64,000 nucleotides of DNA from assembly GCA_950097015.1 (NCBI GenBank), contig CATNEN010000024.1, forward strand, positions 3,844,001 to 3,908,000. The letters are read 5' to 3'. Below are positions 32,703 through 62,599 of the stretch, in pieces. This stretch comes from Macrostomum hystrix (taxonomy: Eukaryota; Animalia; Platyhelminthes). The first letter of the stretch is position 1. Every line of letters begins with the position of its first letter. The translations under genes were made by a program, and so were the position numbers. The notes beneath the pieces are model-generated. The model did not search any database, was not told where the DNA came from, and saw only the letters and a program-made list of their open reading frames with translations.

Positions 32703-34119
32703 CTGCGAATGTATTTGCGAGTGACCGTATAAGAACTACTAAGTAGTAGTAGTTCAATACATAGGCTTTCTAGCGAATGTTAAAAGTAGAAAGACCATAT
32801 TTCAAATGCCCACAGTTCCCCATTTCAGTATCTCCCAAAATATCCGACCAATCGCCATAAAAATCCAGAACTTTGGTTAAACTACTTGTACTTCGATCAC
32901 AAAACATCGGCATCGTCGAGATATTCAACCGTTTCTATGTTGCAAATATGCAAATAACGCAGTTCAAGTGCGACATATTCAAGTCAAGTGGCAACAAGCC
33001 AAATCAAGTTGCAAATTGTCTATTCAGAGTTACCAAAAGAGCAAGTCAAGTGCAACATAGTCAATTCAAGAAGCAACTCATTCGTTTCTATGTGTATTTC
33101 AAATGAATCCTCGCAATTCTCGCTCAAATGATTCTATCAGTCGCTGCTTGTCCCCAGCGGGTATTCTGGCTCGTGCGGCAGCCATTTGCTGTTGAGTTGG
33201 CTTTGTCGCACTTGGTTTGGCCTTTTCTCTCTGTCGTCGTCATTGCGCAACAGTGGGGGTATATAGAGAAGCGCTCTGATTGGCTAATTTGCACTTGAAC
33301 TGGCGTTTGCACTTGACTTGACTTGACACTGCACTTGCTATTTTGGCAGATCAACTGACTTTCATGCACTTGAGATTACTATGTGGCACTTGAGTAAGGC
33401 TAGTCTGCTACTTGACCGGAAAAAACTATAAAAATATTTTCTCTCTGCAAGCCACGCTGATTTCATTACAGTCGGGGTGTCTGGAGGCTAAGAATTTCTA
33501 TTGTTAATAAAATCAAGTATACAGAATACGACAGTGTTAATAGGCAATGTTAACTATTTTACGAGTAGATACTTACATTTGATACAATCATTTGCAAAGT
33601 CATGATTGCTGTTCAGAGCTCTCCAAAGCTGAAAGTTGGATAGGTAAAAATAGTTAAATAGGCTAAACACGTATATACATCTACTCGAAACGGGTATGTG
33701 TTAAGTAAGGGTATATTTTACTTATTACTTTATTTAACTATACCATATACTGTACTTTACTTCATACAAAATTAATTTGCAATTTCGCTACATCTTCGTA
33801 TTAATCTGGATCACTTAATGTAGTAATAGTACTTAAAATGTAGTTTAGAACCAAAACGTTCTAAATTAATTAGAAAAAAACGAATAAAAAACAGCACTCA
33901 GAAATTTGCATTTTATAGCAGCGTTTAATTTTTCCGTAAAACCCAGATTACAAGCAGAATAAGCAGAAGAAGAAATGCACAACAACTAGTATTAGTCACT
34001 ACACAGCGTAGATCTCATAATTCAAAGGAAAATTGGCTGGGCAATGAAAAGCAGGTCAGTGTAATTTATTTCAACATTTAAGGACTGCAACTAAACCGAA
34101 GTTCCACAAGCCGATATTG

Positions 34120-34835
34120 CAGGACTGGGTGTGAAATGGCGGAGGGCGACCCAACATGGCAGAACTGGGTGTGAAGGGCAGAGGGCAACCCAACATTGCA
34201 GGACTGGGTGTTAAGGGCAGAGGGCAACCCAACATTGCAGGACTGGGTGTTAAGGGCAGAGGGCAACCCAACACTGCAGGACTGGGTGTTAAGGGCAGAG
34301 GGCAACCCAACATTACAGGACTGGGTGTTAAGGACAGAGGGCAACCCAACATTGCAGGACTGGGTGTGAAGGGCAGAGGGCAACCCAACATTGCAGGACT
34401 AGGTGTTAAGGACAAAGGGCAACCCAACATTGCAGGACTGGGTGTTAAGGGCAGAGGGCAACCCAACATTGCAGGACTGGGTGTTAAGGGCAGAGGGCAA
34501 CCCAACATTGCAGGACTGGGTGTTAAGGACAGAGGGCAACCCAACATTGCAGGACTAGGTGTGAAGGGCAGAGGGCAACCCAACATTGCAGGACTAGGTG
34601 TGAAGGGCAGAGGGCAACCCAACATTGCAGGACTAGGTGTGAAGGGCAGAGGGCAACCCAACATTGCAGGACTGGGTGTTAAGGACAGAGGGCAAACCAA
34701 CATTGCAGGACTAGGTGTGAAGGGCAGAGGGCAACCCAACATTACAGGACTGGGTGTTAAGGGCAGAGGGCAAACCAACATTGCAGGACTGGGTGTTAAG
34801 GGTAGAGGGCAATCCAACATTGCAGGACTGAATGT
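34120..34835. repeat. 39-bp minisatellite (GCAGGACTGGGTGTTAAGGGCAGAGGGCAACCCAACATT), about 18 copies
   Basis: Direct reading; 13-aa period in the ORF track. Confidence 0.95.
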
Positions 34836-34957
34836 TAAGGCTGCAACCCGACACATTGCACCGGGAGCACGCGGAAGGAATTGTGTTCGGGCGGGCTGGG
34901 CGATTCTGAGACCGCATCTTGCGAAACGAATGAGCGGCGAAGAGCAGCAAATGTGGA

Positions 34958-35527
34958 CTACATTTCTCCGCACTGGGCAATGAGCACCTGAACTTTGGGC
35001 TTGTTGTTAGCCCCAATAGGTACATTCTCAATCTTTCTAAGCACAAGTTGACCATCAACCAGCTGGCCAAATACCACGTGCTTTTTGTCAAGAAAGTCGC
35101 AGGCGTCGCAGGTAATAAAAAACTGGCAGCCGTTGCTGTCCCGGCCAGAATTAGCCATAGACAGCATGCCGGCGCAGGAATGTGCGCAGCTGAAATTCTC
35201 GTCGGCGAAAGCGCCGCCGTAGATGCTGCAGACCCCGGTGCCGTCGCCATTGATGAAGTCGCCGCCTTGCACCATGAAGCCTTTGATGACGCGATGAAAT
35301 GCCGAGCCTTTGTAGCCCAGGGGGACGCCATCTTTGCAGAACTCGCCGGTGCAGAATTGGCGAAAATTTTCAGCCGTCTTCGGCACTACATCGGCAAAGA
35401 GTTCAAACTGCATGCGACCAATCTCTTGGCCACCGACTGTGATGTCAAAGAACACAACAGGATTCTTCGGATTGTTCATGCGCTCCGCCACAGCGGGCAG
35501 CGGAAAGTCGCTGCCGGAACCGGACAT
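34958..35527 (-). CDS. PPIH: Peptidyl-prolyl cis-trans isomerase H (cyclophilin H, U4/U6 snRNP), 189 aa, intronless CDS
   Basis: [68 protein letters not shown]...QCGEM is the PPIH signature. ATG at 35527. Confidence 0.95.
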
Positions 35528-35654
35528 GGCAGCTGCTGGCAGGGGAAATTTAGGAGCAAATTTTACGGAATCACTATAGTATTCACAAAATTTCACTATT
35601 GCTAATTACATCATAGAGGCTGAAGGAGGGGACTATTTCGGAGCCGTTGATGAA

Positions 35655-36290
35655 TTGGAGAGGATAATGGCAGAGCCATGGAAGGATAATGGCAGAGCCG
35701 CTGAAGGATATTGGCAGAGCCGCTGAAGGATATTGGCAGAGCCGCTGAAGGATATTGGCAGAGCCGCTGAAGGATAATGGCAGAGCCGCTGAAGGATATT
35801 GGCAGAGCCGCTGAAGGATAATGGCAGAGCCAAGGAAGGATATTGGCAGAGCCGCTGAAGGATAATGGCAGAGCCATGGAAGGATATTGGCAGAGCCGCT
35901 GAAGGATAATGGCAGAGCCGCTGAAGGATAATGGCAGAGTCGCTGAAGGACATTGGCAGAGCCATGGAAGGATATTGGCAGAGCCGCTGAAAGATAATGG
36001 CAGAGCCATGGAAGGATAATGGCAGAGCCGCTGAAGGATAATGGCAGAGCCGCTGAAGGATAATGGCAGAGCCGCTGAAGGATAATGGCAGAGCCATGGA
36101 AGGATATTGGCAGAGCCGCTGAAGGATAATGGCAGAGCCGCTGAAGGATAATGGCAGAGCCGCTGAAGGATAATGGCAGAGCTGCTGAAGTATATTGGCA
36201 GAGCCGCTGAAGGATAATGGCAGAGCCATGGAAGGATATTGGCAGAGCCGCTGAAGGATATTGGCAGAGCCATGGAAGGATATTGGCAGT
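35655..36290. repeat. 22-bp minisatellite (GAAGGATAATGGCAGAGCCGCT), about 28 copies
   Basis: Direct reading. Confidence 0.95.
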
Positions 36291-36909
36291 CTAATGGCAC
36301 AGCCGCTATAACGGATATTGGCACAGCCATTATAATGGACTGGGGTGATAATTGCAGAGCCGCTGAAGGACTGGAGAAAAAAGCGAAAAGAATAAAAATG
36401 TTCACCAGAAAACATGGGATAAATATACTTGGCTTACAAGTGGGATCAATAATGTGCGAAAATGCGAGTTGATTACAATTATTTAAGCAAAAAAATAAAC
36501 TACGAGCTTACTAATTTAATATCGATTATTTATTGACAACAAAAGCCGACCGAACATTCTAATTTGGATCGACTGCTGAACAGATACTTTTTGATCAAGT
36601 TGAATACGAGTAAAATAAACAACCATGGTGTAGATTGCAAATTGAACACACTAAGGACAGTAAAAGCGAAAATGCATTGAATACATGTAACGCAGCAAAT
36701 GCCATAAAATGGTTACAAAATTATTTTCACATGCATTTTAAGCCCCCTGTAAATACACCAATAATAGATGCAGCTGTATTAAGAGTACATAAACATCAAG
36801 CCGCCACACAAAAAGAACCATTGCTTGAACACTTTGAACAAACAAAGTTTAAAAATAAAAAAACATGCATTTTTGTGGAGTCAGTGCTCAGAACTTCAGT
36901 TCAAACGCC

Positions 36910-38206
<1,297 letters not shown>

Positions 38207-38745: not shown

Positions 38746-41922
<3,177 letters not shown>

Positions 41923-42623: not shown

Positions 42624-44272
42624 CTACTCCACATCGGCCAGCGGCTTGTAATTCTTCAGCTCCGGATAGTGACTGGCCTCAGACTCCAGATGCCGCTTGG
42701 TCTCCTCCATCTGGCTCTGTAGTCGGGGCGGCATCCGGGCCCAGACGTCGCTGAACATCTCCAACGGATTTGGCTTCGGTCGTTTCTCAGCCTGGGCAAA
42801 TTTCTGCAGCACACGCTTCCTAATAGCCTGCTTCGCTGCCGTCTCCTGCTCATCATTCCACCAGCCTCGTTTGGTGAGAAATTTGCGCATTCGCAGTATG
42901 GGATTATCCTCGCGATCCCAGAAGCTCAGCTCGTCGATGGAACTGTTTAGGAAAATGCAGTGGGAAAAAGCACCTATGATTATAGCTGAACTGTAAATAA
43001 CTATAAACTTATTTGTGGGTACACACAATGTATAATTATAATACTCGAAGTGGGCTGTGGGTACTGAAGGGCATTGGCGACAGTCTACCCGAAGCCAGCG
43101 AGGAAACAATTCTGCCCCGTTTGGCTGTCCTATGTGTACATTGGAACAAGTAAGTAATGACTAGATGACGAGGCATTAACTGATACACTCAGAGGTACAT
43201 GGATACTAGAGGTTTACCCCAAACTTTATCTATATTTTATATATAAATTAAGCACGCACCGATATGCTGAGCTATCATCAGAGGTGCTGTGATGCCCCAG
43301 TCGGTAGGTCATCATCTCAATCAGGGTGGGTCGCATCTCGGACAAACACAACTGTCTAGCGCGTTGCGTGACTTCAAACAGAGCAAAAACATCGTTGCCA
43401 TCGACTCGGACTGTCGGTATGCCAAAAGCCGGCCCCCGAATGGCGATACCATCACCGCGGTACTGATCTGATGTTGGCGTAGATATAGCGTAGCCATTGT
43501 TGCGACAGACAAACATCACCGGACAGTCCAAGGTGGCGGCAAAATTCAAAGCGGCATGAGCGTCGCCCTCCGAAGCGGAGCCATCGCCAAAGTAGCAGAC
43601 AACGCACAGGCCGTTTTGCATTCGTTTGAAAGCGTAGGCGGCGCCGCTAGCCTGAGGCATTTGGGTAGCTAATGGCGAAGACACTGTCACAAAACTGTGA
43701 TCCTTGCTGCCATAATGTACAGGCATCTGGCGGCCACGATTTATGTCGTTATCGTTTGAGTAGCACTGGTCCATGAATTTTTCTAGCTCCATGCCGCGTT
43801 GCATTAGAACGCCAGACTCGCGATACTGGCAGAATACTAGGTCGTTCGGATTAAGCGCGGCGGCGTGGGCCACAATGCCCTCCTCGCCAAAACTAGTCAT
43901 ATAGAAACTGATGCGCCCCTGGCGCTGCGAGTCGTAAAGAATCTTGTCCATTGTGTTCAACTGAAGCATGTTGTCGTAGACTTTTAAACAGAGTTCCTTG
44001 TCTTTAGCTAGGGTCGGTTCCGGCGCGCCTTGGACAAGATCGCCACGCCGATTGACCAGCCGAAATACTGGGATGCCTTCGAAGTTTTCCGGATGAATGA
44101 AGTCCAGCTGGGCGGTAAAGCTGGATCTCGAGCCAGGAAACATTGGCTTTTCATCGTCTGGTGAGGTACTGGCAGCTAAAGGTGGCGGATTTGAAAGAAG
44201 TTGTCGAGTGCTGGCCAGGCTAGGGAGCCGGCGCAGCAGACTCTGCTGCAGGCGACAGGCAAAAGTTAAAGC
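42624..44272 (-). CDS. BCKDHA: Branched-chain 2-oxo acid dehydrogenase E1 alpha; exons 44272-43260 and 42942-42624 (443 codons, no in-frame ATG at the 5' end)
   Basis: [29 protein letters not shown], ThDP motif [18 protein letters not shown], and phospho-loop [12 protein letters not shown]. Arg/Leu/Ser-rich transit peptide at the N-terminus. Confidence 0.95.
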
Positions 44273-45349
44273 CTGCAAAAAAAATTGGCATGAGCTTGAG
44301 CTTTCTATTTTGCCTCCCTAAACTCCAAACATATCCTAGCAGACAATGTTTGTCATTGTCTAGATTCTTGGATATTTGCATTTTTAAATAATAAAACTAT
44401 CGCTGATCCATCTTTCTAACAGAAGCTAAAATAAAACACTAAAACTAAAAACAAATAAAGCAGTTATAAAACGCCACTAAATTAAACTGAATAAATTTTG
44501 TTTTAATTTTGTTAGACAACAATTAACTGTCTTATATACAACACTTCAACTACATTAAATAGAATTGTAAGTTGAATAACACATTGTATTATATTAAATT
44601 TCTTTTCATTAAATGTTTTAATAAAAGCTCTGTTTGATTAACAACATACACAATTAGTAATGCATTATCTCACCAGACTATCCTATGCATTGATTGCTAT
44701 TCTCATTTCATCCTTTTTTATATATCACTGCTGCTTGTAATTTCTTTAGTATGCATGCATCTTGGTCAAGTGTATATATGTTTTCCAGATATTAATGTAT
44801 CCAGTGCTCAACTATTTCACAATACTGATTAAGACTCACATATGACACTTAAAAACTGTGTTAATTTAATATTTAATATTTAATAATTGAATTTAACAAT
44901 TCACTATTACCTTTGTCCTAGTGCAAAAACAAAAAAATTATAATGTAGTTTACTATTCTATTCTATGAGTATTTCCAGAGGCCATTGTAGAACATTGATC
45001 TTTTATTTTCTGTGTGCACAGCAGTAGCAAAAAAGGCAAACGTAGGGTAAGCCTAGGTTAAAAGGGTAACCAACCTAGAGCTTTAAATGAGTCTGTAGAG
45101 GATATGCCTTGTGCTGTCACTTTTGCACAACTTCATGCTTGTAATGTCCAGTGGATTGCATATTGGCCATGCAATCCACTGGACATTTGCATCATTCTTC
45201 ACCTACTAATTATTTCAGGCAGCATTGTTCATACATAAGACAAGTAATTGATATACTGGACAATCAATAAATGTGATTAATAACTTAATAACTTAATAGC
45301 TTAACTTAATAACTTAATAACTAAATTAATCCATCTGGACCCCTGGAAA

Positions 45350-45460
45350 CAGGCACCTCACACACAGCAGCAAGCCAAGCAGGGAAGGGGGTGGCAGCTG
45401 GAGTGCCACTTACCTCAGGCCCACACACGCACAGAGCAGACCAAACCAGGGGAGGACTTA
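45350..45460 (+). repeat. Interspersed repeat, also present at about 62175-62285
   Basis: Shared blocks GCACC..CACACAGCAGCA..CCAGGGA and CCCACACGCACAGAGCAGACCAA(A/G)CC(A/G)GGG. Confidence 0.5.
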
Positions 45461-46787
45461 GATGCCTGGGTAGGGACGAGAGGACCAAGCCACGCGCGCA
45501 GACAACTGGTGAAACCTCACCACTCAGAGCATGCATGGCTGGTGCACACCTGCCCCACCCAAGCCCCAAACAAGCAGGCATGCCGAAGGCAAGGGTTAAG
45601 CTATTTTAAATTAGCTTTGGTTGCACATAATAAGGTGCATCTCCGCAAGTCACTATTTCGTAGACCCCCAACTAAGCCCAGAAATAATCGTGACTTGGAG
45701 AGAGAAACGAACCAGCAAACATTGGAAAGTGAGGCAGCGACATTAGCCACTGACCCACTTACCCCCTTCTGATAGACCACAGTTGGTGCATTGACAGACC
45801 ACAGTCAAAGCACGGATAGCGCAGTTTGTCCCCTTAAAATTTCTTTCTGGACAGACTATGCCACTTTCATGGTATGCTAATTTGTTAGGTTTACAACTTT
45901 GGGATAATTGCATGGTTATTTGTCAGCATACAAAAGCATTTTCTTGGCATACCTAGCACACAAATGGATTGATCCAGACTAGCTATAGATTGTTGCTTAC
46001 TGATTTTGACCCAATGCACGTGTTTCTGCATGGCATTCTAGCATACACTAGTGTGCAATTTGAAAAACTTTCTAAGTTTGGTGTGCAAAACTAATTTTCC
46101 CTATTTTCTTTTAATTATGCACTAACCTGTTATAGACTATGGGTATGCTTTAGTGTTATACTGTTGGGCAAATTATTTGAAAAACAGTAGCTTACATTAC
46201 TGTAGCTTTAGTCACTGCTTTTTTAATAGCTTACATGGGACTGGTAACTCTCTATTAAAACATAGTAAGTAACCTTACTTCTGCTACTCATGATTTTCAC
46301 AGGTGCCTAGGAAAAATGCTAATTATTGCAAAACTTAGTGAATAATATTGCAAGTCTGTCATAAACTGAAATTTGAGTAACTCTATTACATTTAACAAAT
46401 GGCCATTTCTGATAATAATAAATAAAACTGAAATTTTAAAACTTTAAAGGCAAAGCACATTTTTAATAAAACATAACAACTTAACAAGTATTGTCGGGCT
46501 TAATATATAAGCATAAGACAAGCAGTTATGCAAGCTTTAGTTAGTTAATACAATAGGTTAGTTGAATGGATATACAAGTTTTTTTTTGTTTTTATTACAA
46601 ATATATATTGCCAACATAAACTTTTCTATACAGTAAATCTATGCATCAAAAATCTAACTTCAATTAACTTTCCTACTTTTCTTTAGTATAGAAAAAATGC
46701 AAATTATTTGACAACAACAAATGGACTCTAACTTTTACAATTCCTATATTTTTTCCTCAATCTTGAATCTACAGATGTTAAATATAG

Positions 46788-47355
46788 TCCATAGTCCGGA
46801 TCATGTCGTTTACGCCGGAGATCTCCGGCGTAAATCTGGTTTGGGATCGGAGGCTGGCGTAAGTGCTTGGCGTAAGTATAGGCCAAAATGTGCCTTGGCG
46901 TAAGTGCTTGGCGTAAGTACATGGCATAAATCAAGTGGCGTAAATGTTAGCACAAATGAGATCATTCACGATCAAATGTATCACTATAGAACATAACACA
47001 TTTGCGTTAATTATGATGTTTGCGTTAATTAGGAGCAGCATTAAAACAAAGTTCATTAAAATATTGCAGTTCGTATAAATGAGATATCAGAATATCTATT
47101 GTAGGATAGCAAAAGTTTTTTTAGCTTTAAGATGCTTACTTTGATACTTGATTCAGAATTTGCAACTTGTAAGATTTTTAAACAGTTGCAACTTCTGAAT
47201 TTAATTAATCACCGATTAACATGATTTGTGAAGGATTTTTTTTTGGGTGGCGTAAGTCAGAGGGACCTTTTTTTGGTTGGCTCAAGTCTGGCGTAAGTGC
47301 CAAAAAATGTTGGATTTTTCCTCCGGCGTAAGTCCTGCATGATCCGGACTATGGA
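46788..47355. mobile_element. MITE with TIRs TCCATAGTCCGGATCATG..TTACGCCGGAG and internal GGCGTAAG repeats
   Basis: 17-bp perfect terminal inverted repeat, extended imperfectly; TATA on both outer sides. Confidence 0.75.
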
Positions 47356-49416
47356 ATATAGTATATATATGAAGTGCAATACAATCTTAACTTTTGTATT
47401 ACACTTCTAATTGTTCATTTTCCATTGTCCTTTGTGCAGGGTTAGGGTCTTATGCTAGGATCATACATGCGCAACCTTAGCCGGCCAAGCGACTAAGTTT
47501 TTGCTCTATTTACAACTTAGTTTGCTCTCATTTGCTCTCTTTTTCTCTCCCCTTTTTTCTTTTCTTCATGTCTTCCTTTTTTGTCCCTTGGTCCCCCCTT
47601 TGACTTTTTTGCACTTGGTTGATTGGTTTTTGTGACTTACCTTGCTTGGCCCTTGTTTTACCTGGTTTGGCCGGGTTGGCCGGGTGTTGCAAATGTATGG
47701 CTAGGATTAGGGGACACAGACAGTGCACAGACAGCACACAGATGGTGCACATTTCTTGTCAAAAAACTATTATGGTGGACATTGTGCCACTTTACTGACT
47801 TATGGCTCCTATGCATGTACTCCTATGGTATCAGGTGTGTTTGATGTCAGTAGGCCCCTAAAACTGATTGGCTAAAGTTATATACATTGCATTAACATTT
47901 GTAAGCTACTAAGTAATGGGGATGCCCAACACTGGCTATAGAAACAAAAATTAAATTATACCAAGGCAAAATATATTTTAAATATAAGTTGCAAATTGTG
48001 CTTTACATAGCTTTTTATAAAAGTTGAAAACCTAAAACATTAAAGTGCTAAATTATACTAATTATTTTTAGGTCTAAATTAGCTAATTAAATACCATACC
48101 TAGCTGTACTAGGCTTCTACTATAGCATCTAACTCATATAAGGCATTCTGTTGTATCAACAAACATAGAAAAGTTATAAAAATGGTAGTTGTTATTTGTC
48201 CGGTTAACCGGTTAACCGGACAAATAACAACTGCCTATAAAAATAGCATATTACCATAACCATAAGGCATAACATGGTTATTTATAATACTACAAAAATT
48301 AAAAAATACGAGCTACACAGTAACAAGTCGTCAATAGCGATTATGACCGACAAATAGTCGGACATCTTACAAGCAGACAACTAAAACAAGGAACAGGGAA
48401 CAAAAATGGCGGCCAAAGTCGCGGGTGGCGACGACAGCGCGTTGAGCTTGACGAGTAACGTTTTGAAATTTAGGCTTTAGTTTTGCCTACTTTAACAAAG
48501 CGTTTTCTTCTTATCGTCGATTAATTATATGTTTAACTTACATTGGCGTATCGAAGAAACAGCAGGATTCTAATTGCAGAATTTTTTAAAATAAGGATTG
48601 CGTATGCGTCTACATCGTGGTTTGACTCATTGGAAGTCAGTGGCCAAGTGTAGCCACTGTCCCGATAGTCGGGCATTTTTCTACATATATAGTTCACTCT
48701 AAGTAATCTTTTTTTCAAGGCGGTAGAGACCTCATCTATAAATATCAGGTAGAGAAGTTTGAGAAGACGCTCTTCCTTATGTCAACTCAATTCTGCAATT
48801 TTCAGACTGCAAGTACATGTAAATAACGTCAACACTCAAACAATACTCGTAATCATAAGATGATTTGAATTGTGCTAGCTTGGTCTAGCAATACAAAATT
48901 CTTGCCTGAAAATGTTCATCTCGTTAACTGTTAAGTGTAAATTATGCTGATATAATGCGAGTTACACCATAAATTATTAATTCATAATCTATAGTTGAAT
49001 GCTAAATAAATAGTGAGTGTTTTAAGAAGATCATTCGGTCGAATAATGCGTCAGTTGTACTAAATTAAAAAGTCATTTGTGGAGGTGAACAGCTCTCGCA
49101 TAAAAGAAATTGATTTACGACGATGCTGAAAATGTAAATCTACAGTTTGAACAACAGAATAGCATAGAATACAATATTACTAGCTTTTTTTGCCCGTTGT
49201 TTTTGGGGCAGAAATTTAAAGCAAAGCAGTAAGCAATTCACGTCTCTGTATTAACTTTATAGTGAAGGTCACCATTTATTTATTTACTGCATTAATGAAA
49301 AGTGAAGAGTTTGTTTAAGGGCGTTTTAAGTAAAAAATAAGTGAAAAGTTTGTCCAAACAGCCCCCTCTTGATTACTTCTTTAGAAACATGTCTCTTAGC
49401 CACTCCTCTATACAGT

Positions 49417-49807: not shown

Positions 49808-50760
49808 TCAACTCAAGGCCTGGGGATACACCACATTCTTCGTTCTTCCCCTTGGTGCGAAAATGAATAGGCCAGCTGGAGTTCCAACACGGGAGCAGGC
49901 GACATAAAGCTGCCCATGCGAGAAGCAAGGAGTCTCCAGGTTGATGCCAGCCACCTTCAGCGACTGTCCCTGAGCCTTGTTAATAGTCATCGCAAAGCAC
50001 ACTCTCACAGGGAACTGCAGTCGCTTGAACTGAAATGGCAGGTCCGTGGGGATAATTGGAATCCGGGGAATGAACACAGACTCTCCTCTGCCAGATCCAG
50101 TCATTATCGTGGCCTCAATCACGTGTGGGAAGAGCCGCCTGACTATCAGTCGGGTGCCGTTACACAGCCTTGGCGCATTCAGGTTGCGGAGGAGCATAAT
50201 TGGTGCCCCAACTTTCAGCTGCAAGTTGTGCGATGGAGTTCCAGGAGGATCTAGAGAGTTCAGAAACTCAACAGGATACTCCACAGCGGTGTCATCAGTC
50301 AACGTTGTATCAATTGACTTGTAGGTGAAAACTGCACCTGGCAACTCCTGAAGCAGTTGGTAGTTAATTTCGTTGGCGGCATCATTTCTAGGACACAGAA
50401 TTGCCCTCTCTGACAGCCAGTCAACGTCAGCATATCGAACCATCAGGTTCGGGTAAACTTTTGCCTTGAGCTCCTGCACTGACTGCACAATGGTTCCGAT
50501 TGTAGCGATCGATGACTGCCCATCCTCGGTGCTAATCTCCAGCAGACCATTGCCGATTCGCAATAGATTGGCAGAGAACTCATGAGCTGTTTCGTCTCCT
50601 TGAATTGTAGCTCTCATGTTTGTTCGTAGGTGCAACTTCACAACCGATGGCCACAGGTGAGATGATTTTAGGCAAGCATTAATCTCATCAGCAGGAGTGC
50701 CACGCGGAATCACAGGCAGCGTCTGTCTAAAGTCTCCAGACAGCAGCAGAGTGACACCAC
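49808..50760 (-). pseudogene. Helitron PIF1-like helicase C-terminal fragment
   Basis: MGGVTLLLSGDFRQTLPVIPRGT..RAILCPRN..LKVGAPIMLLRNLN..LCNGTRL..RLQFPVRVCFAMTINKAQGQSL..FSHGQLYVACSRV. Lacks Walker A/B and the Rep domain. Confidence 0.9.
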
Positions 50761-51366
50761 CCATCAGTTGATCGCCAGCCTCTCTCTTTCTTCTATCCCA
50801 GGCTGGCTGGAGAGAAATATAGACCGGAGAGCCCTGCGCACTGGGACGCCACCGCACTCACCGCACTCAGTCTCAGTGCTGCTTGGGGGCCAGTAGACAG
50901 TCTAGGGGTTTGGGCTGTGTACATTCACGTCTTAAAATACAATGTACAGTCTGGGGCTTCGGCGCCCGGGGAAGGGAGGGGGTGGCTGTAATAAAATTTG
51001 GCCCGCAGAGTGGCGGAGGGGAGTTGGGGTGGCTGTCCTCGGAAAACAAAAAGTGACTCACTTTGAGATGATGCAGCTTTGCTCTGGATTGAGTAGAGAT
51101 GTTCAAAATTGACAGCATTGTTGGAAAACATGTAAAGTGTAAGTGGATCAAATTTGGAGAAAATCTGACAAAGTGGGGCGACGATATGTCGAATTGAGTG
51201 ATTTTTTGACGATTTTTGAGCAGTTTTTTGCACTTTTGAGCAGGAAGGAAATGATTTTTCGGGAATTTGAGTAGCCTATTGCACTCAGCGTAGGTGGTTT
51301 TAGGTATGTGCAAAGTTTGGTGCGATTTGGTTGAGCGGTTTCGGCGTCTATAAAGACAAAAGGTTG

Positions 51367-61215: not shown

Positions 61216-62599
61216 CGTACTTTAAACCCTCTATACATGTACTTCAGGTGCAGTCACCAATGCCCAATATATATTTCAGCAGAGAGCTTAAATCCAAATG
61301 TTTGAGCAAAATAAAAGGCAGTATATTCTTAAATCTCTGAATGCCAATTATTTTGATAAATAATTAGTTGCACACAAAGATAGTCAGGAACCCAATGAGC
61401 TCCCCCAATGAGACTTCTAAGTTACCCTTTAGAGGGTAAAGATGAGTTTTTGGACATGGACTAAAGTTAAAAATTACCATTCCAAGTATTTATTTAGTTT
61501 GTAGAATAAATACTAACTGTTACAGTAAAGTTATAGAAACTCAATTCTAAAACTCACCACCAGCATTGTAACAGTCCCTAATTTCTGTCAGATCTAAAAC
61601 TGCACTCCCTGTAGCAATATTCAATGACTCAAACAGATGGGTATATGCAGATTATCTGAAGTGCTTAGTGATTCTGACAAATTAACTAAAGCAGCATTCT
61701 CAGCAGGCATAAATTTCCCAAACAACTGGGTACTTCTTTTTTACAACTTAGCACTTTATATTTGGTTGCTTTTGCTGGCTATGCATACTATATTCTTGCA
61801 ATCTGGTTTTAGTAGCACTGAAATTGCTCACTGATTCTGTTAGACTGATTGTCTTAGAGTACTGATGGCTTTTTAGGCTGGCCTATTTTGCATACAATTT
61901 TCTCAACAAAATGGGGGCTCCTGTATTCTGCTGTTAGCTGAGTCTGACAGTTCAGTTTTAGCAGCACTGGTATTGCTCCCTGACAGTGTTACACTGGTTT
62001 GGGCATAGTTTTTTGTCCAAATCTTCTTTTTAGGCTGCCAACTGTCTATCCATCTATTCTATCTATTTGCAGGGGGGCCCGGGTTATTGTTGCACAAGCA
62101 ACGGAGTGGCACACCCCCGGACCAGCAAACTAGGCTAGGCGCTTTTGTGCCTATCGGGCCACCTCCCCTCAGCAGGCACCACACACAGCAGCACAGACCA
62201 GCCAGGGAGGGCAGGAATCACTCAGAATAGGCAGCAGTGTCCCCCACCCCAGCCCCACACGCACAGAGCAGACCAAGCCGGGGCGGAAGGCTGATAAGAA
62301 ATCACTCATAAGAAACCAAGTGGGTTTAAGGGGCAAGTGGGTTTCATAAGAATGAAACCCACTTGCCCCCTAAATATTGCCAACTGCTGTTTGCTAATTG
62401 GAACTGATGGATTTCAGCAAAATTAGTTGTTTTTGTTGACTCTAGCAGTCTAGTTTCACCATCACTAGTGTAGCTTGCTAATTCTTTCAGATAGGCCTAT
62501 ATTTGGGCAGCAGATGTGTGGTTTGCTGATTTTGTTATAGTGGTTTGGACACAGTTTTCTGTCTAAATCTTCATTAGCAAACAGCACTGATGTTGTTTG

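What the first reader, a model, noticed from the sequence alone, without database searches (positions are those of the whole stretch)
44230..44300. BCKDHA appears to lack its own start codon: SL-donated AUG would complete the mitochondrial transit peptide
Seen: the CDS opens at a strong acceptor TTTTTTTTGCAG|GCT TTA ACT in phase 0. The nearest upstream ATG (44291) is out of frame. From the acceptor to the stop there are 443 codons, essentially full length for this family (human is 445 aa). Adding one Met gives [28 protein letters not shown], a typical presequence. Established: flatworm SL RNAs end in AUG usable for initiation. Inference: translation of this enzyme depends on trans-splicing. 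This is the strongest single sign of the SL system in the window.
Basis: partly seen in the sequence, partly recalled or inferred. Interest (0 to 1): 0.7.

Follow-up and report, generated by a model that had tools for sequence, protein, structure and literature searches.

The report
Start codon borrowed from spliced leader
In this Macrostomum flatworm the gene for a mitochondrial enzyme subunit (BCKDH E1-alpha) has no start codon of its own and most likely takes it from the AUG that ends the trans-spliced leader; this habit has been known in flatworms since 2006, so it is one more, nicely documented, case.

Summary
On the minus strand, a two-exon BCKDHA (E1-alpha) gene of 443 codons opens at T8-GCAG|GCT (44273/44272). 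An in-frame stop lies 16 codons upstream and there is no in-frame ATG.

The evidence for an SL-donated AUG is indirect but consistent:
- All four Macrostomum lignano copies carry a genomic ATG on the three bases where this genome has the acceptor's CAG (MASAFACRL vs [M]ALTFACRL). The missing Met therefore belongs immediately before 44272.
- The first genomic Met (codon 44) lies inside the mature enzyme.
- The 39 codons before the mature part look like a mitochondrial presequence and are under purifying selection.
- The genus SL ends in ATG, and its trans-acceptor motif [T/C]TNCAG is matched here.
- No ATG|GT exists within 3.8 kb upstream.

No RNA evidence could be obtained. A cis-spliced upstream exon therefore remains a rival (about 15%).

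The mechanism is already known (Cheng et al. 2006). This scan has already reported the same thing for other genes of this genome (LTV1, TAF10, ADCK1, OTUD6B, mitochondrial TyrRS). The small new point is start-codon turnover between congeners at the same three nucleotides.

The parts
44273..44284 (-). 3' splice acceptor: T8 polypyrimidine run (44284-44277) followed by GCAG (44276-44273). Proposed SL trans-splice site; the exon starts at 44272.
   Evidence: Sequence read. Matches the M. lignano trans-acceptor motif [T/C]TNCAG (PMC8629364). T6+NCAG occurs only 3 times on both strands of the window.
43260..44272 (-). BCKDHA exon 1 (337 codons + 2 nt), beginning with GCT (Ala), which would be codon 2 of the protein.
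   Evidence: Translation. 90% identity to M. lignano PAA51911.1. Pfam E1_dh 2e-75. PDB 1DTW chain A E=6e-127.
44156..44272 (-). Mitochondrial presequence region (39 codons upstream of the part that aligns with the mature human enzyme).
   Evidence: Four Arg, no Asp/Glu, rich in Leu/Ser/Ala, amphipathic [11 protein letters not shown]. Mature human residue 4 aligns with ORF residue 40. dN 0.245 vs dS 1.08 against M. lignano, with one in-frame 9-nt indel.
44141..44143 (-). First in-frame genomic ATG (codon 44 of the ORF), inside the mature protein (EKP-M-FPG).
   Evidence: It aligns with Gln-8 of the mature human chain.
44318..44320 (-). In-frame stop TAG, 16 codons upstream of the acceptor. It closes the frame with no ATG in between.
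   Evidence: in-frame codon list.
44289..44291 (-). Nearest upstream ATG, out of frame (+1). It gives a 23-codon dead-end ORF.
44276..44278 (-). In-frame TTG inside the acceptor. It is the only near-cognate alternative start if the RNA were not spliced.
   Evidence: Poor context; 10 upstream ATGs lie in the 400 nt before it.
42943..43259 (-). Single intron (317 nt, GT..AG, phase 2) after SSAY-R.
   Evidence: tblastn blocks 44254-43244 and 42941-42627.
42624..42942 (-). BCKDHA exon 2 with stop TAG at 42626-42624.
   Evidence: Pfam E1_dh C-terminal part.
45320..45800 (-). GC-rich dispersed-repeat fragment. It holds the best-looking alternative cis donor (GAG|GTAAGT, exon end 45414) with an in-frame ATG at 45581. 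Judged not to be part of the gene.
   Evidence: candidate. (second diverged copy at about 62170-62290, where the donor-like string is not kept). No Pfam hit for its ORF. No counterpart upstream of the M. lignano gene.

Best explanation
The BCKDHA (branched-chain keto-acid dehydrogenase E1-alpha) pre-mRNA of this Macrostomum species is SL trans-spliced at the acceptor 44273/44272. The spliced leader of the genus ends in ...UUGCAUG, so the mature mRNA reads ...GCAUG|GCU UUA ACU. The leader's terminal AUG becomes codon 1, with G at +4. Translation from it gives a 444-residue precursor, [28 protein letters not shown]..., whose first ~37-39 residues are the mitochondrial presequence.

Without trans-splicing no AUG is in frame upstream of the mature protein, so production of an importable enzyme depends on the leader.

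Shown: the genomic anatomy, the position of the missing Met from the orthologue, and the coding nature of the presequence.

Inferred: that the SL, rather than a cis exon, is what is joined at 44272.
For: (1) There is no in-frame ATG between the stop at 44320 and codon 44, and the ORF starts exactly at a T8-GCAG acceptor.

(2) All four M. lignano genomic copies read caattaATG|GCT..., and MASAFACRLRQ aligns without gaps to [10 protein letters not shown]. The ATG falls on the window's CAG. An in-frame TAA four codons upstream fixes the M. lignano N-terminus.

(3) Mature human E1-alpha (PDB 1DTW, 400 aa) residue 4 aligns with ORF residue 40, so Met-44 lies inside the mature enzyme.

(4) The presequence has 4 Arg and 0 acidic residues in 39 aa, and an amphipathic stretch. 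Its dN/dS against M. lignano is about 0.23 at dS about 1.1, with one in-frame 9-nt indel. It is therefore translated.

(5) The M. lignano SL is 35 nt and ends TTGCATG. 30% of genes are trans-spliced and the acceptor motif is [T/C]TNCAG (PMC8629364). SLs of M. lignano, M. cliftonense and M. hystrix are identical where they overlap and are taken to end in the start codon (PMC10468722).

(6) Precedent: Cheng et al. 2006, as summarised in PMC9851317 and PMC12582326.

(7) There is no ATG|GT within 3.8 kb upstream. The two GTRAG donor-like sites within 1.1 kb (44674, 44840) cannot deliver an in-frame ATG.

(8) Ten upstream ATGs in the last 400 nt all lead to dead ends, so an unprocessed leader would be a poor mRNA.

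(9) Lead only, not tested here: earlier notes of this scan report SL-AUG junctions seen in transcripts for other genes of the same genome.
Against: The protein collection holds no transcript-derived protein of this species. A metagenome scan for the exon start was blank.

The SL RNA gene of this genome is not in the window, so its 3' AUG rests on published data for the genus.

In-frame ATG-to-GT combinations with good donors exist further upstream (45581/45414, 46036/46001, 46291/46235). In parasitic flatworms, acceptors are often shared between cis- and trans-splicing (PMC12582326). One similar claim in this genome was reported as refuted by a tiny upstream exon.
Confidence: 0.78

Rival explanations
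1. A cis-spliced upstream exon supplies the start codon. This would be either a micro-exon ending exactly in ATG or a longer exon giving an N-terminal extension, spliced to the same acceptor at 44273.
For: Phase-0 ATG..GT candidates exist: ATG 45581 with GAG|GTAAGT at 45414 (56 codons), ATG 46036 with GTAAGC at 46001, ATG 46291 with GTAAGC at 46235, and ATG|GT at 48097, 48257 and 48263.
Against: The orthologue shows Met directly before the Ala codon, so extensions of 12-56 residues have no counterpart. An exact ATG|GT needs an intron of at least 3.8 kb, where published mean introns in the genus are 0.56-1.1 kb. The best donor lies in a dispersed GC-rich repeat whose second copy does not keep the donor. 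There is no conserved upstream block with M. lignano.
Confidence: 0.15
2. Translation starts at the first genomic AUG (codon 44, 44143-44141). The upstream 43 codons would then be 5' UTR, giving an enzyme without a presequence.
For: It is the first in-frame ATG in the genome sequence.
Against: Met-44 aligns with residue 8 of the mature human protein, so no targeting signal would be left for a matrix enzyme. The 43 upstream codons stay open in two species at dS about 1.1, with dN/dS about 0.23 and one in-frame indel. M. lignano starts its ORF at the aligned upstream ATG.
Confidence: 0.03
3. Non-AUG initiation takes place on an unspliced transcript at the in-frame UUG (44278-44276), two codons upstream of the exon.
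For: UUG is in frame and is the start picked by the mechanical ORF finder.
Against: UUG is a weak near-cognate start in eukaryotes (established knowledge). Its context is U-rich. It sits inside a strong acceptor that would be removed by splicing. Ten upstream AUGs precede it within 400 nt.
Confidence: 0.03

Closest known systems
Flatworm SL 3'-terminal AUG used as initiator methionine (Cheng, Cohen, Ndegwa and Davis 2006, J Biol Chem 281:733; 'slORFs' of PMC9851317)
   Same: The SL ends in AUG. The recipient ORF starts at the trans-splice acceptor in phase 0 and has no AUG of its own, so the leader's AUG completes the protein. In Schistosoma mansoni the SL AUG is in frame in 28% of trans-spliced mRNAs, and more than 40 cDNAs need it.
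   Different: This is a free-living macrostomorph, not a parasite. For this gene the junction was not seen in RNA here. A congener (M. lignano) still has the genomic ATG at the same three bases, which gives a before/after pair.
Macrostomum SL trans-splicing system (Ustyantsev and Berezikov 2021, PMC8629364; Wiberg et al. 2023, PMC10468722)
   Same: The acceptor fits [T/C]TNCAG. The SL of the genus ends ...TTGCATG. 20-30% of genes are trans-spliced. The G3 paper already notes that the SL probably contains the start codon.
   Different: Those papers do not, in the text read here, list genes that depend on the SL AUG. No SL RNA gene lies in this window.
Human/animal BCKDHA (2-oxoisovalerate dehydrogenase subunit alpha, mitochondrial; PDB 1DTW)
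   Same: E1_dh domain, the GDG..NN thiamine-diphosphate motif, the [13 protein letters not shown] phosphorylation loop, about 445 residues, and a cleavable N-terminal presequence.
   Different: Other animals encode their own ATG. Here the genome stops one codon short.

Membership tests
SL-donated initiator AUG (flatworm slORF class) | The organism has an SL whose last three bases are AUG. | not testable with these tools
   There is no SL gene in the window and no reads. Published for the genus: the M. lignano SL ends TTGCATG, and the SLs of three Macrostomum species are identical where they overlap.
SL-donated initiator AUG (flatworm slORF class) | A splice acceptor lies directly at the 5' end of the ORF, in phase 0, with no stop after the junction. 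| tested here: met
   T8-GCAG|GCT at 44273/44272, followed by 443 open codons over two exons.
SL-donated initiator AUG (flatworm slORF class) | No genomic in-frame AUG can give the conserved N-terminus. | tested here: met
   The in-frame stop at 44320 is followed by no ATG until codon 44, which lies inside the mature protein. The orthologue's Met aligns with the acceptor's CAG.
SL-donated initiator AUG (flatworm slORF class) | Transcripts carry the SL joined to the first codon of the exon. | not testable with these tools
No transcript-derived protein of this species is in the collection. The metagenome scan was blank.
SL-donated initiator AUG (flatworm slORF class) | No cis exon supplies the AUG. 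| tested here: inconclusive
   There is no ATG|GT within 3.8 kb. Longer-extension candidates exist but are unsupported by the orthologue and by repeat analysis. Only RNA can close this.
BCKDH E1-alpha (2-oxoisovalerate dehydrogenase alpha subunit) | E1_dh domain with the thiamine-diphosphate motif, and full-length similarity to characterised E1-alpha. | tested here: met
   Pfam PF00676 at 2e-75 on exon 1 and 2e-8 on exon 2. Human E1-alpha structures at E=6e-127 over residues 40-337. Best hits are all named 2-oxoisovalerate dehydrogenase alpha.
BCKDH E1-alpha (2-oxoisovalerate dehydrogenase alpha subunit) | N-terminal mitochondrial presequence. | tested here: inconclusive
   Composition and amphipathicity fit (4 R, 0 D/E, muH 0.70 over [11 protein letters not shown]), but the shuffle test is only suggestive (0.07-0.10). 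TargetP and MitoFates were not available.

The most novel reading that the evidence does not exclude
Start-codon turnover between congeners at the same three nucleotides. M. lignano keeps a genomic ATG where this species has the acceptor's CAG, so the initiator codon was either handed over to the spliced leader or taken back from it.

A single T-to-A change (ATG to AAG) would destroy the start codon. In the same step it would create an AG acceptor exactly at the codon boundary, where the SL's AUG restores the same Met. That gives a one-step, nearly neutral route by which genes in SL-AUG organisms can become dependent on trans-splicing.

The direction of the change and the one-step route are inference.
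Probability: 0.55. Interest if true: 0.45.

Novelty: new member of a known kind. Interest (0 to 1): 0.3.

Why it matters
For annotation: gene finders that demand a genomic ATG will call this essential mitochondrial enzyme partial, or will start it at Met-44 and lose its targeting signal. The M. lignano models of the same gene are all flagged 'partial'.

For biology: it adds a metabolic, mitochondrial enzyme to the genes whose expression depends on trans-splicing in a free-living flatworm. The contrast with M. lignano offers a clean pair for asking how start codons move between gene and leader.

It does not open a new mechanism.

Tried and rejected
Neither tool was tried again.
- Transcript-derived proteins: searches with exon 1 and with the first 100 codons, to catch short fragments, found only M. 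lignano genome models and no protein of this species.
- Exact scan of metagenome contigs for the first 30 nt of the exon: blank, as expected. This says nothing.
- SL RNA gene in the window: none within 3 mismatches.
- Rfam on 44200-48200: only sub-threshold miRNA-like noise.
- The GC-rich island at 45320-45800 as a 5' exon: rejected as a dispersed repeat. My guess that it is a tRNA-derived SINE was not confirmed, as ARAGORN found nothing.
- Upstream non-coding homology with M. lignano: none.
- Supplement of PMC8629364, to see whether the M. lignano orthologue is trans-spliced: not held.
- The joined two-exon protein was never built or searched.

Full report
**Observation**

The feature lies on the minus strand. 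Reading 44700 down to 41800 gives ...gctcATGccaaTTTTTTTTGCAG|GCT TTA ACT TTT GCC.... The acceptor AG is at 44274-44273 and the first codon at 44272-44270.

Translation from 44272 starts [27 protein letters not shown]. It runs open for 337 codons to a donor CG|GTGCGT (exon 1 ends at 43260). A 317-nt intron (43259-42943) ends in ...ctaaacAG, and exon 2 (42942-42624) ends with TAG. tblastn with the M. lignano protein finds exactly these two blocks and no other copy in the window. 1013 + 319 nt gives 443 codons plus the stop.

Upstream, the in-frame codons run back 16 codons from 44272 to a TAG at 44320-44318, with no ATG among them. The ATG at 44291 is in the +1 frame and ends after 23 codons.

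**What the gene is and whose genome this is**

Exon 1 hits 2-oxoisovalerate dehydrogenase alpha subunits of many animals at 60-69% identity. Its best hit, at 90%, is a Macrostomum lignano protein flagged 'partial'. Pfam gives E1_dh on both exons. Human E1-alpha structures match at E=6e-127.

The M. lignano loci show the same neighbour, PCNA, downstream on the same strand, as in the window (PCNA at 41883). Synonymous divergence from M. lignano is saturated (dS 1.1-1.8). The window therefore comes from another, clearly separate Macrostomum species. Earlier notes of the scan also call it a Macrostomum.

**Where the protein must begin**

The PDB chain of mature human E1-alpha (400 residues) aligns from its residue 4 to ORF residue 40. 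The first genomic in-frame Met (codon 44, ATG at 44143-44141) therefore lies inside the mature enzyme, and a start there would leave no targeting signal.

The 39 residues before the mature part have four Arg, no acidic residue, many Leu/Ser/Ala, and an amphipathic stretch [11 protein letters not shown]. This is the usual make-up of a matrix presequence. The shuffle test is only suggestive, and TargetP/MitoFates were not available.

Against M. lignano these codons show dN 0.245 versus dS 1.08, and the only length difference is an in-frame 9-nt indel. At that divergence an untranslated stretch would not stay open, so the presequence is translated and initiation must lie upstream of it.

**The key comparison**

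All four M. lignano genomic copies (L001-L004) read ...caattaATG|GCT TCC GCC TTT GCC TGT CGT..., with an in-frame TAA four codons upstream. Its protein therefore starts MASAFACRLRQ, which aligns without a gap to [10 protein letters not shown]. In the DNA alignment the ATG of M. lignano falls on the CAG of the window's acceptor. Upstream of that point the two species share no detectable similarity.

This fixes the missing Met of the window's protein to the position immediately before 44272. That is exactly where a spliced leader ending in AUG would put it. An acceptor-like Y6-N-CAG occurs at 5e-4 per position in this window, so the coincidence is not expected by chance.

**The SL system**

For M. 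lignano, PMC8629364 reports:
- a 35-nt SL ending TTGCATG;
- 30% of genes trans-spliced;
- [T/C]TNCAG as the top motif at trans-acceptors.

The window has TTGCAG after eight T.

- SL sequences identical to that of M. lignano wherever they overlap;

PMC12582326 and PMC9851317 summarise the precedent of Cheng et al. 2006. All flatworm SLs end in AUG. In S. mansoni that AUG is in frame in 28% of trans-spliced mRNAs, and more than 40 cDNAs need it.

The joined message here would read ...GCAUG|GCU, with G at +4.

**Rivals**

(a) A cis exon.
- No ATG|GT exists in the 3.8 kb upstream of the acceptor. The nearest are at 48097, 48257 and 48263.
- Two GTRAG donor-like sites lie within 1.1 kb (exon ends 44674 and 44840). 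Neither can carry an in-frame ATG to the junction.
- Longer exons in phase 0 are possible on paper: ATG 45581 to GAG|GTAAGT at 45414, ATG 46036 to 46001, and ATG 46291 to 46235. Each would add 12-56 residues that M. lignano lacks.
- The best of them sits in a GC-rich dispersed repeat. Its second, diverged copy near 62170-62290 does not keep the donor string, and its ORF has no Pfam match.

I keep this rival at about 15%.

(b) A start at Met-44. This is rejected by the presequence evidence above.

(c) UUG at 44278 on unspliced RNA. This is a weak codon in a poor context, inside the acceptor, and it is preceded by ten dead-end AUGs within 400 nt.

**What could not be done**

- The protein collection holds no transcript-derived protein of this species, either full length or as N-terminal fragments.
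- An exact scan of metagenome contigs was blank.
- The spliced two-exon protein was not joined or searched; the exons were handled separately by reference.

**Comparison with what is known, and novelty**

This works like, and by all testable criteria belongs to, the class of flatworm genes that use the SL's 3'-terminal AUG as initiator. The one untested criterion is the SL-bearing transcript itself.

The scan has already reported the same thing on other DNA of this genome: LTV1, TAF10, ADCK1, OTUD6B, mitochondrial TyrRS and a peptidase. Transcript support was claimed for several of them. I did not re-test those, and they are leads, not support.

The finding is therefore a new member of a known kind. 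The modestly new point is the congener contrast: a genomic ATG in M. lignano and an acceptor CAG on the same three bases here. A single T-to-A change (ATG to AAG) would at once remove the start and create an AG acceptor at the codon boundary, where the SL restores the Met. This route, and the direction of change, are inference and need further Macrostomum genomes.

**Verdict**

- Observation: confirmed.
- Interpretation: supported on indirect evidence, with confidence about 0.78.
- Interest: low to moderate (0.3).

Noticed in passing
window 37589-38188 and 41248-41883 (minus strand): PCNA is present twice, 3695 nt apart, at 99% identity over the first exon. The copy next to BCKDHA has an acceptor ...caattgCAG|CCATAGCCATCATG. 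An SL AUG joined there would read AUG CCA UAG and stop, so PCNA uses its own ATG at 41883. BCKDHA followed by PCNA on one strand is conserved in M. lignano.
   Followed up: partly
L001:5980-6003 (M. lignano), P0128, P0129: All NCBI M. lignano models of this gene are 'partial' and start at RLRQ (L001:6001). That point lies just after a genomic TTGCCTG, which differs by one base from the SL end TTGCATG, so SL trimming by the annotators may have cut too far. Two UniRef models start exactly at Ala-2 (ASAFACRL), although the genome has ATG and no AG before it. Unexplained.
   Followed up: partly
window 46769-47374: Short element bounded by 37-nt inverted repeats (81% complementary, 532 nt apart), with many internal 'acttacgcc' repeats. 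It looks MITE-like.
   Followed up: no
window 45320-45800 and about 62170-62290: GC-rich dispersed repeat in otherwise AT-rich intergenic DNA, followed by a (TTATTAAG)n tail at about 45290-45335. It has A/B-box-like strings, but ARAGORN finds no tRNA. Earlier notes mention abundant tRNA-derived SINEs in this genome.
   Followed up: partly
window 49808-50857 (minus strand): ORF with PIF1 helicase and Pif1 2B domains. It is probably the helicase part of a Helitron-type transposon, 5.5 kb upstream of BCKDHA.
   Followed up: partly
window 34018-34980 and 35529-36422: Two long tandem arrays, with periods of 39 nt and 22 nt.
   Followed up: no
window 44531-44538 (minus strand): TATATAAG lies about 260 nt upstream of the acceptor. 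If it is the promoter's TATA box, the outron would be about 230 nt. The surrounding DNA is AT-rich, so this may be chance.
   Followed up: no
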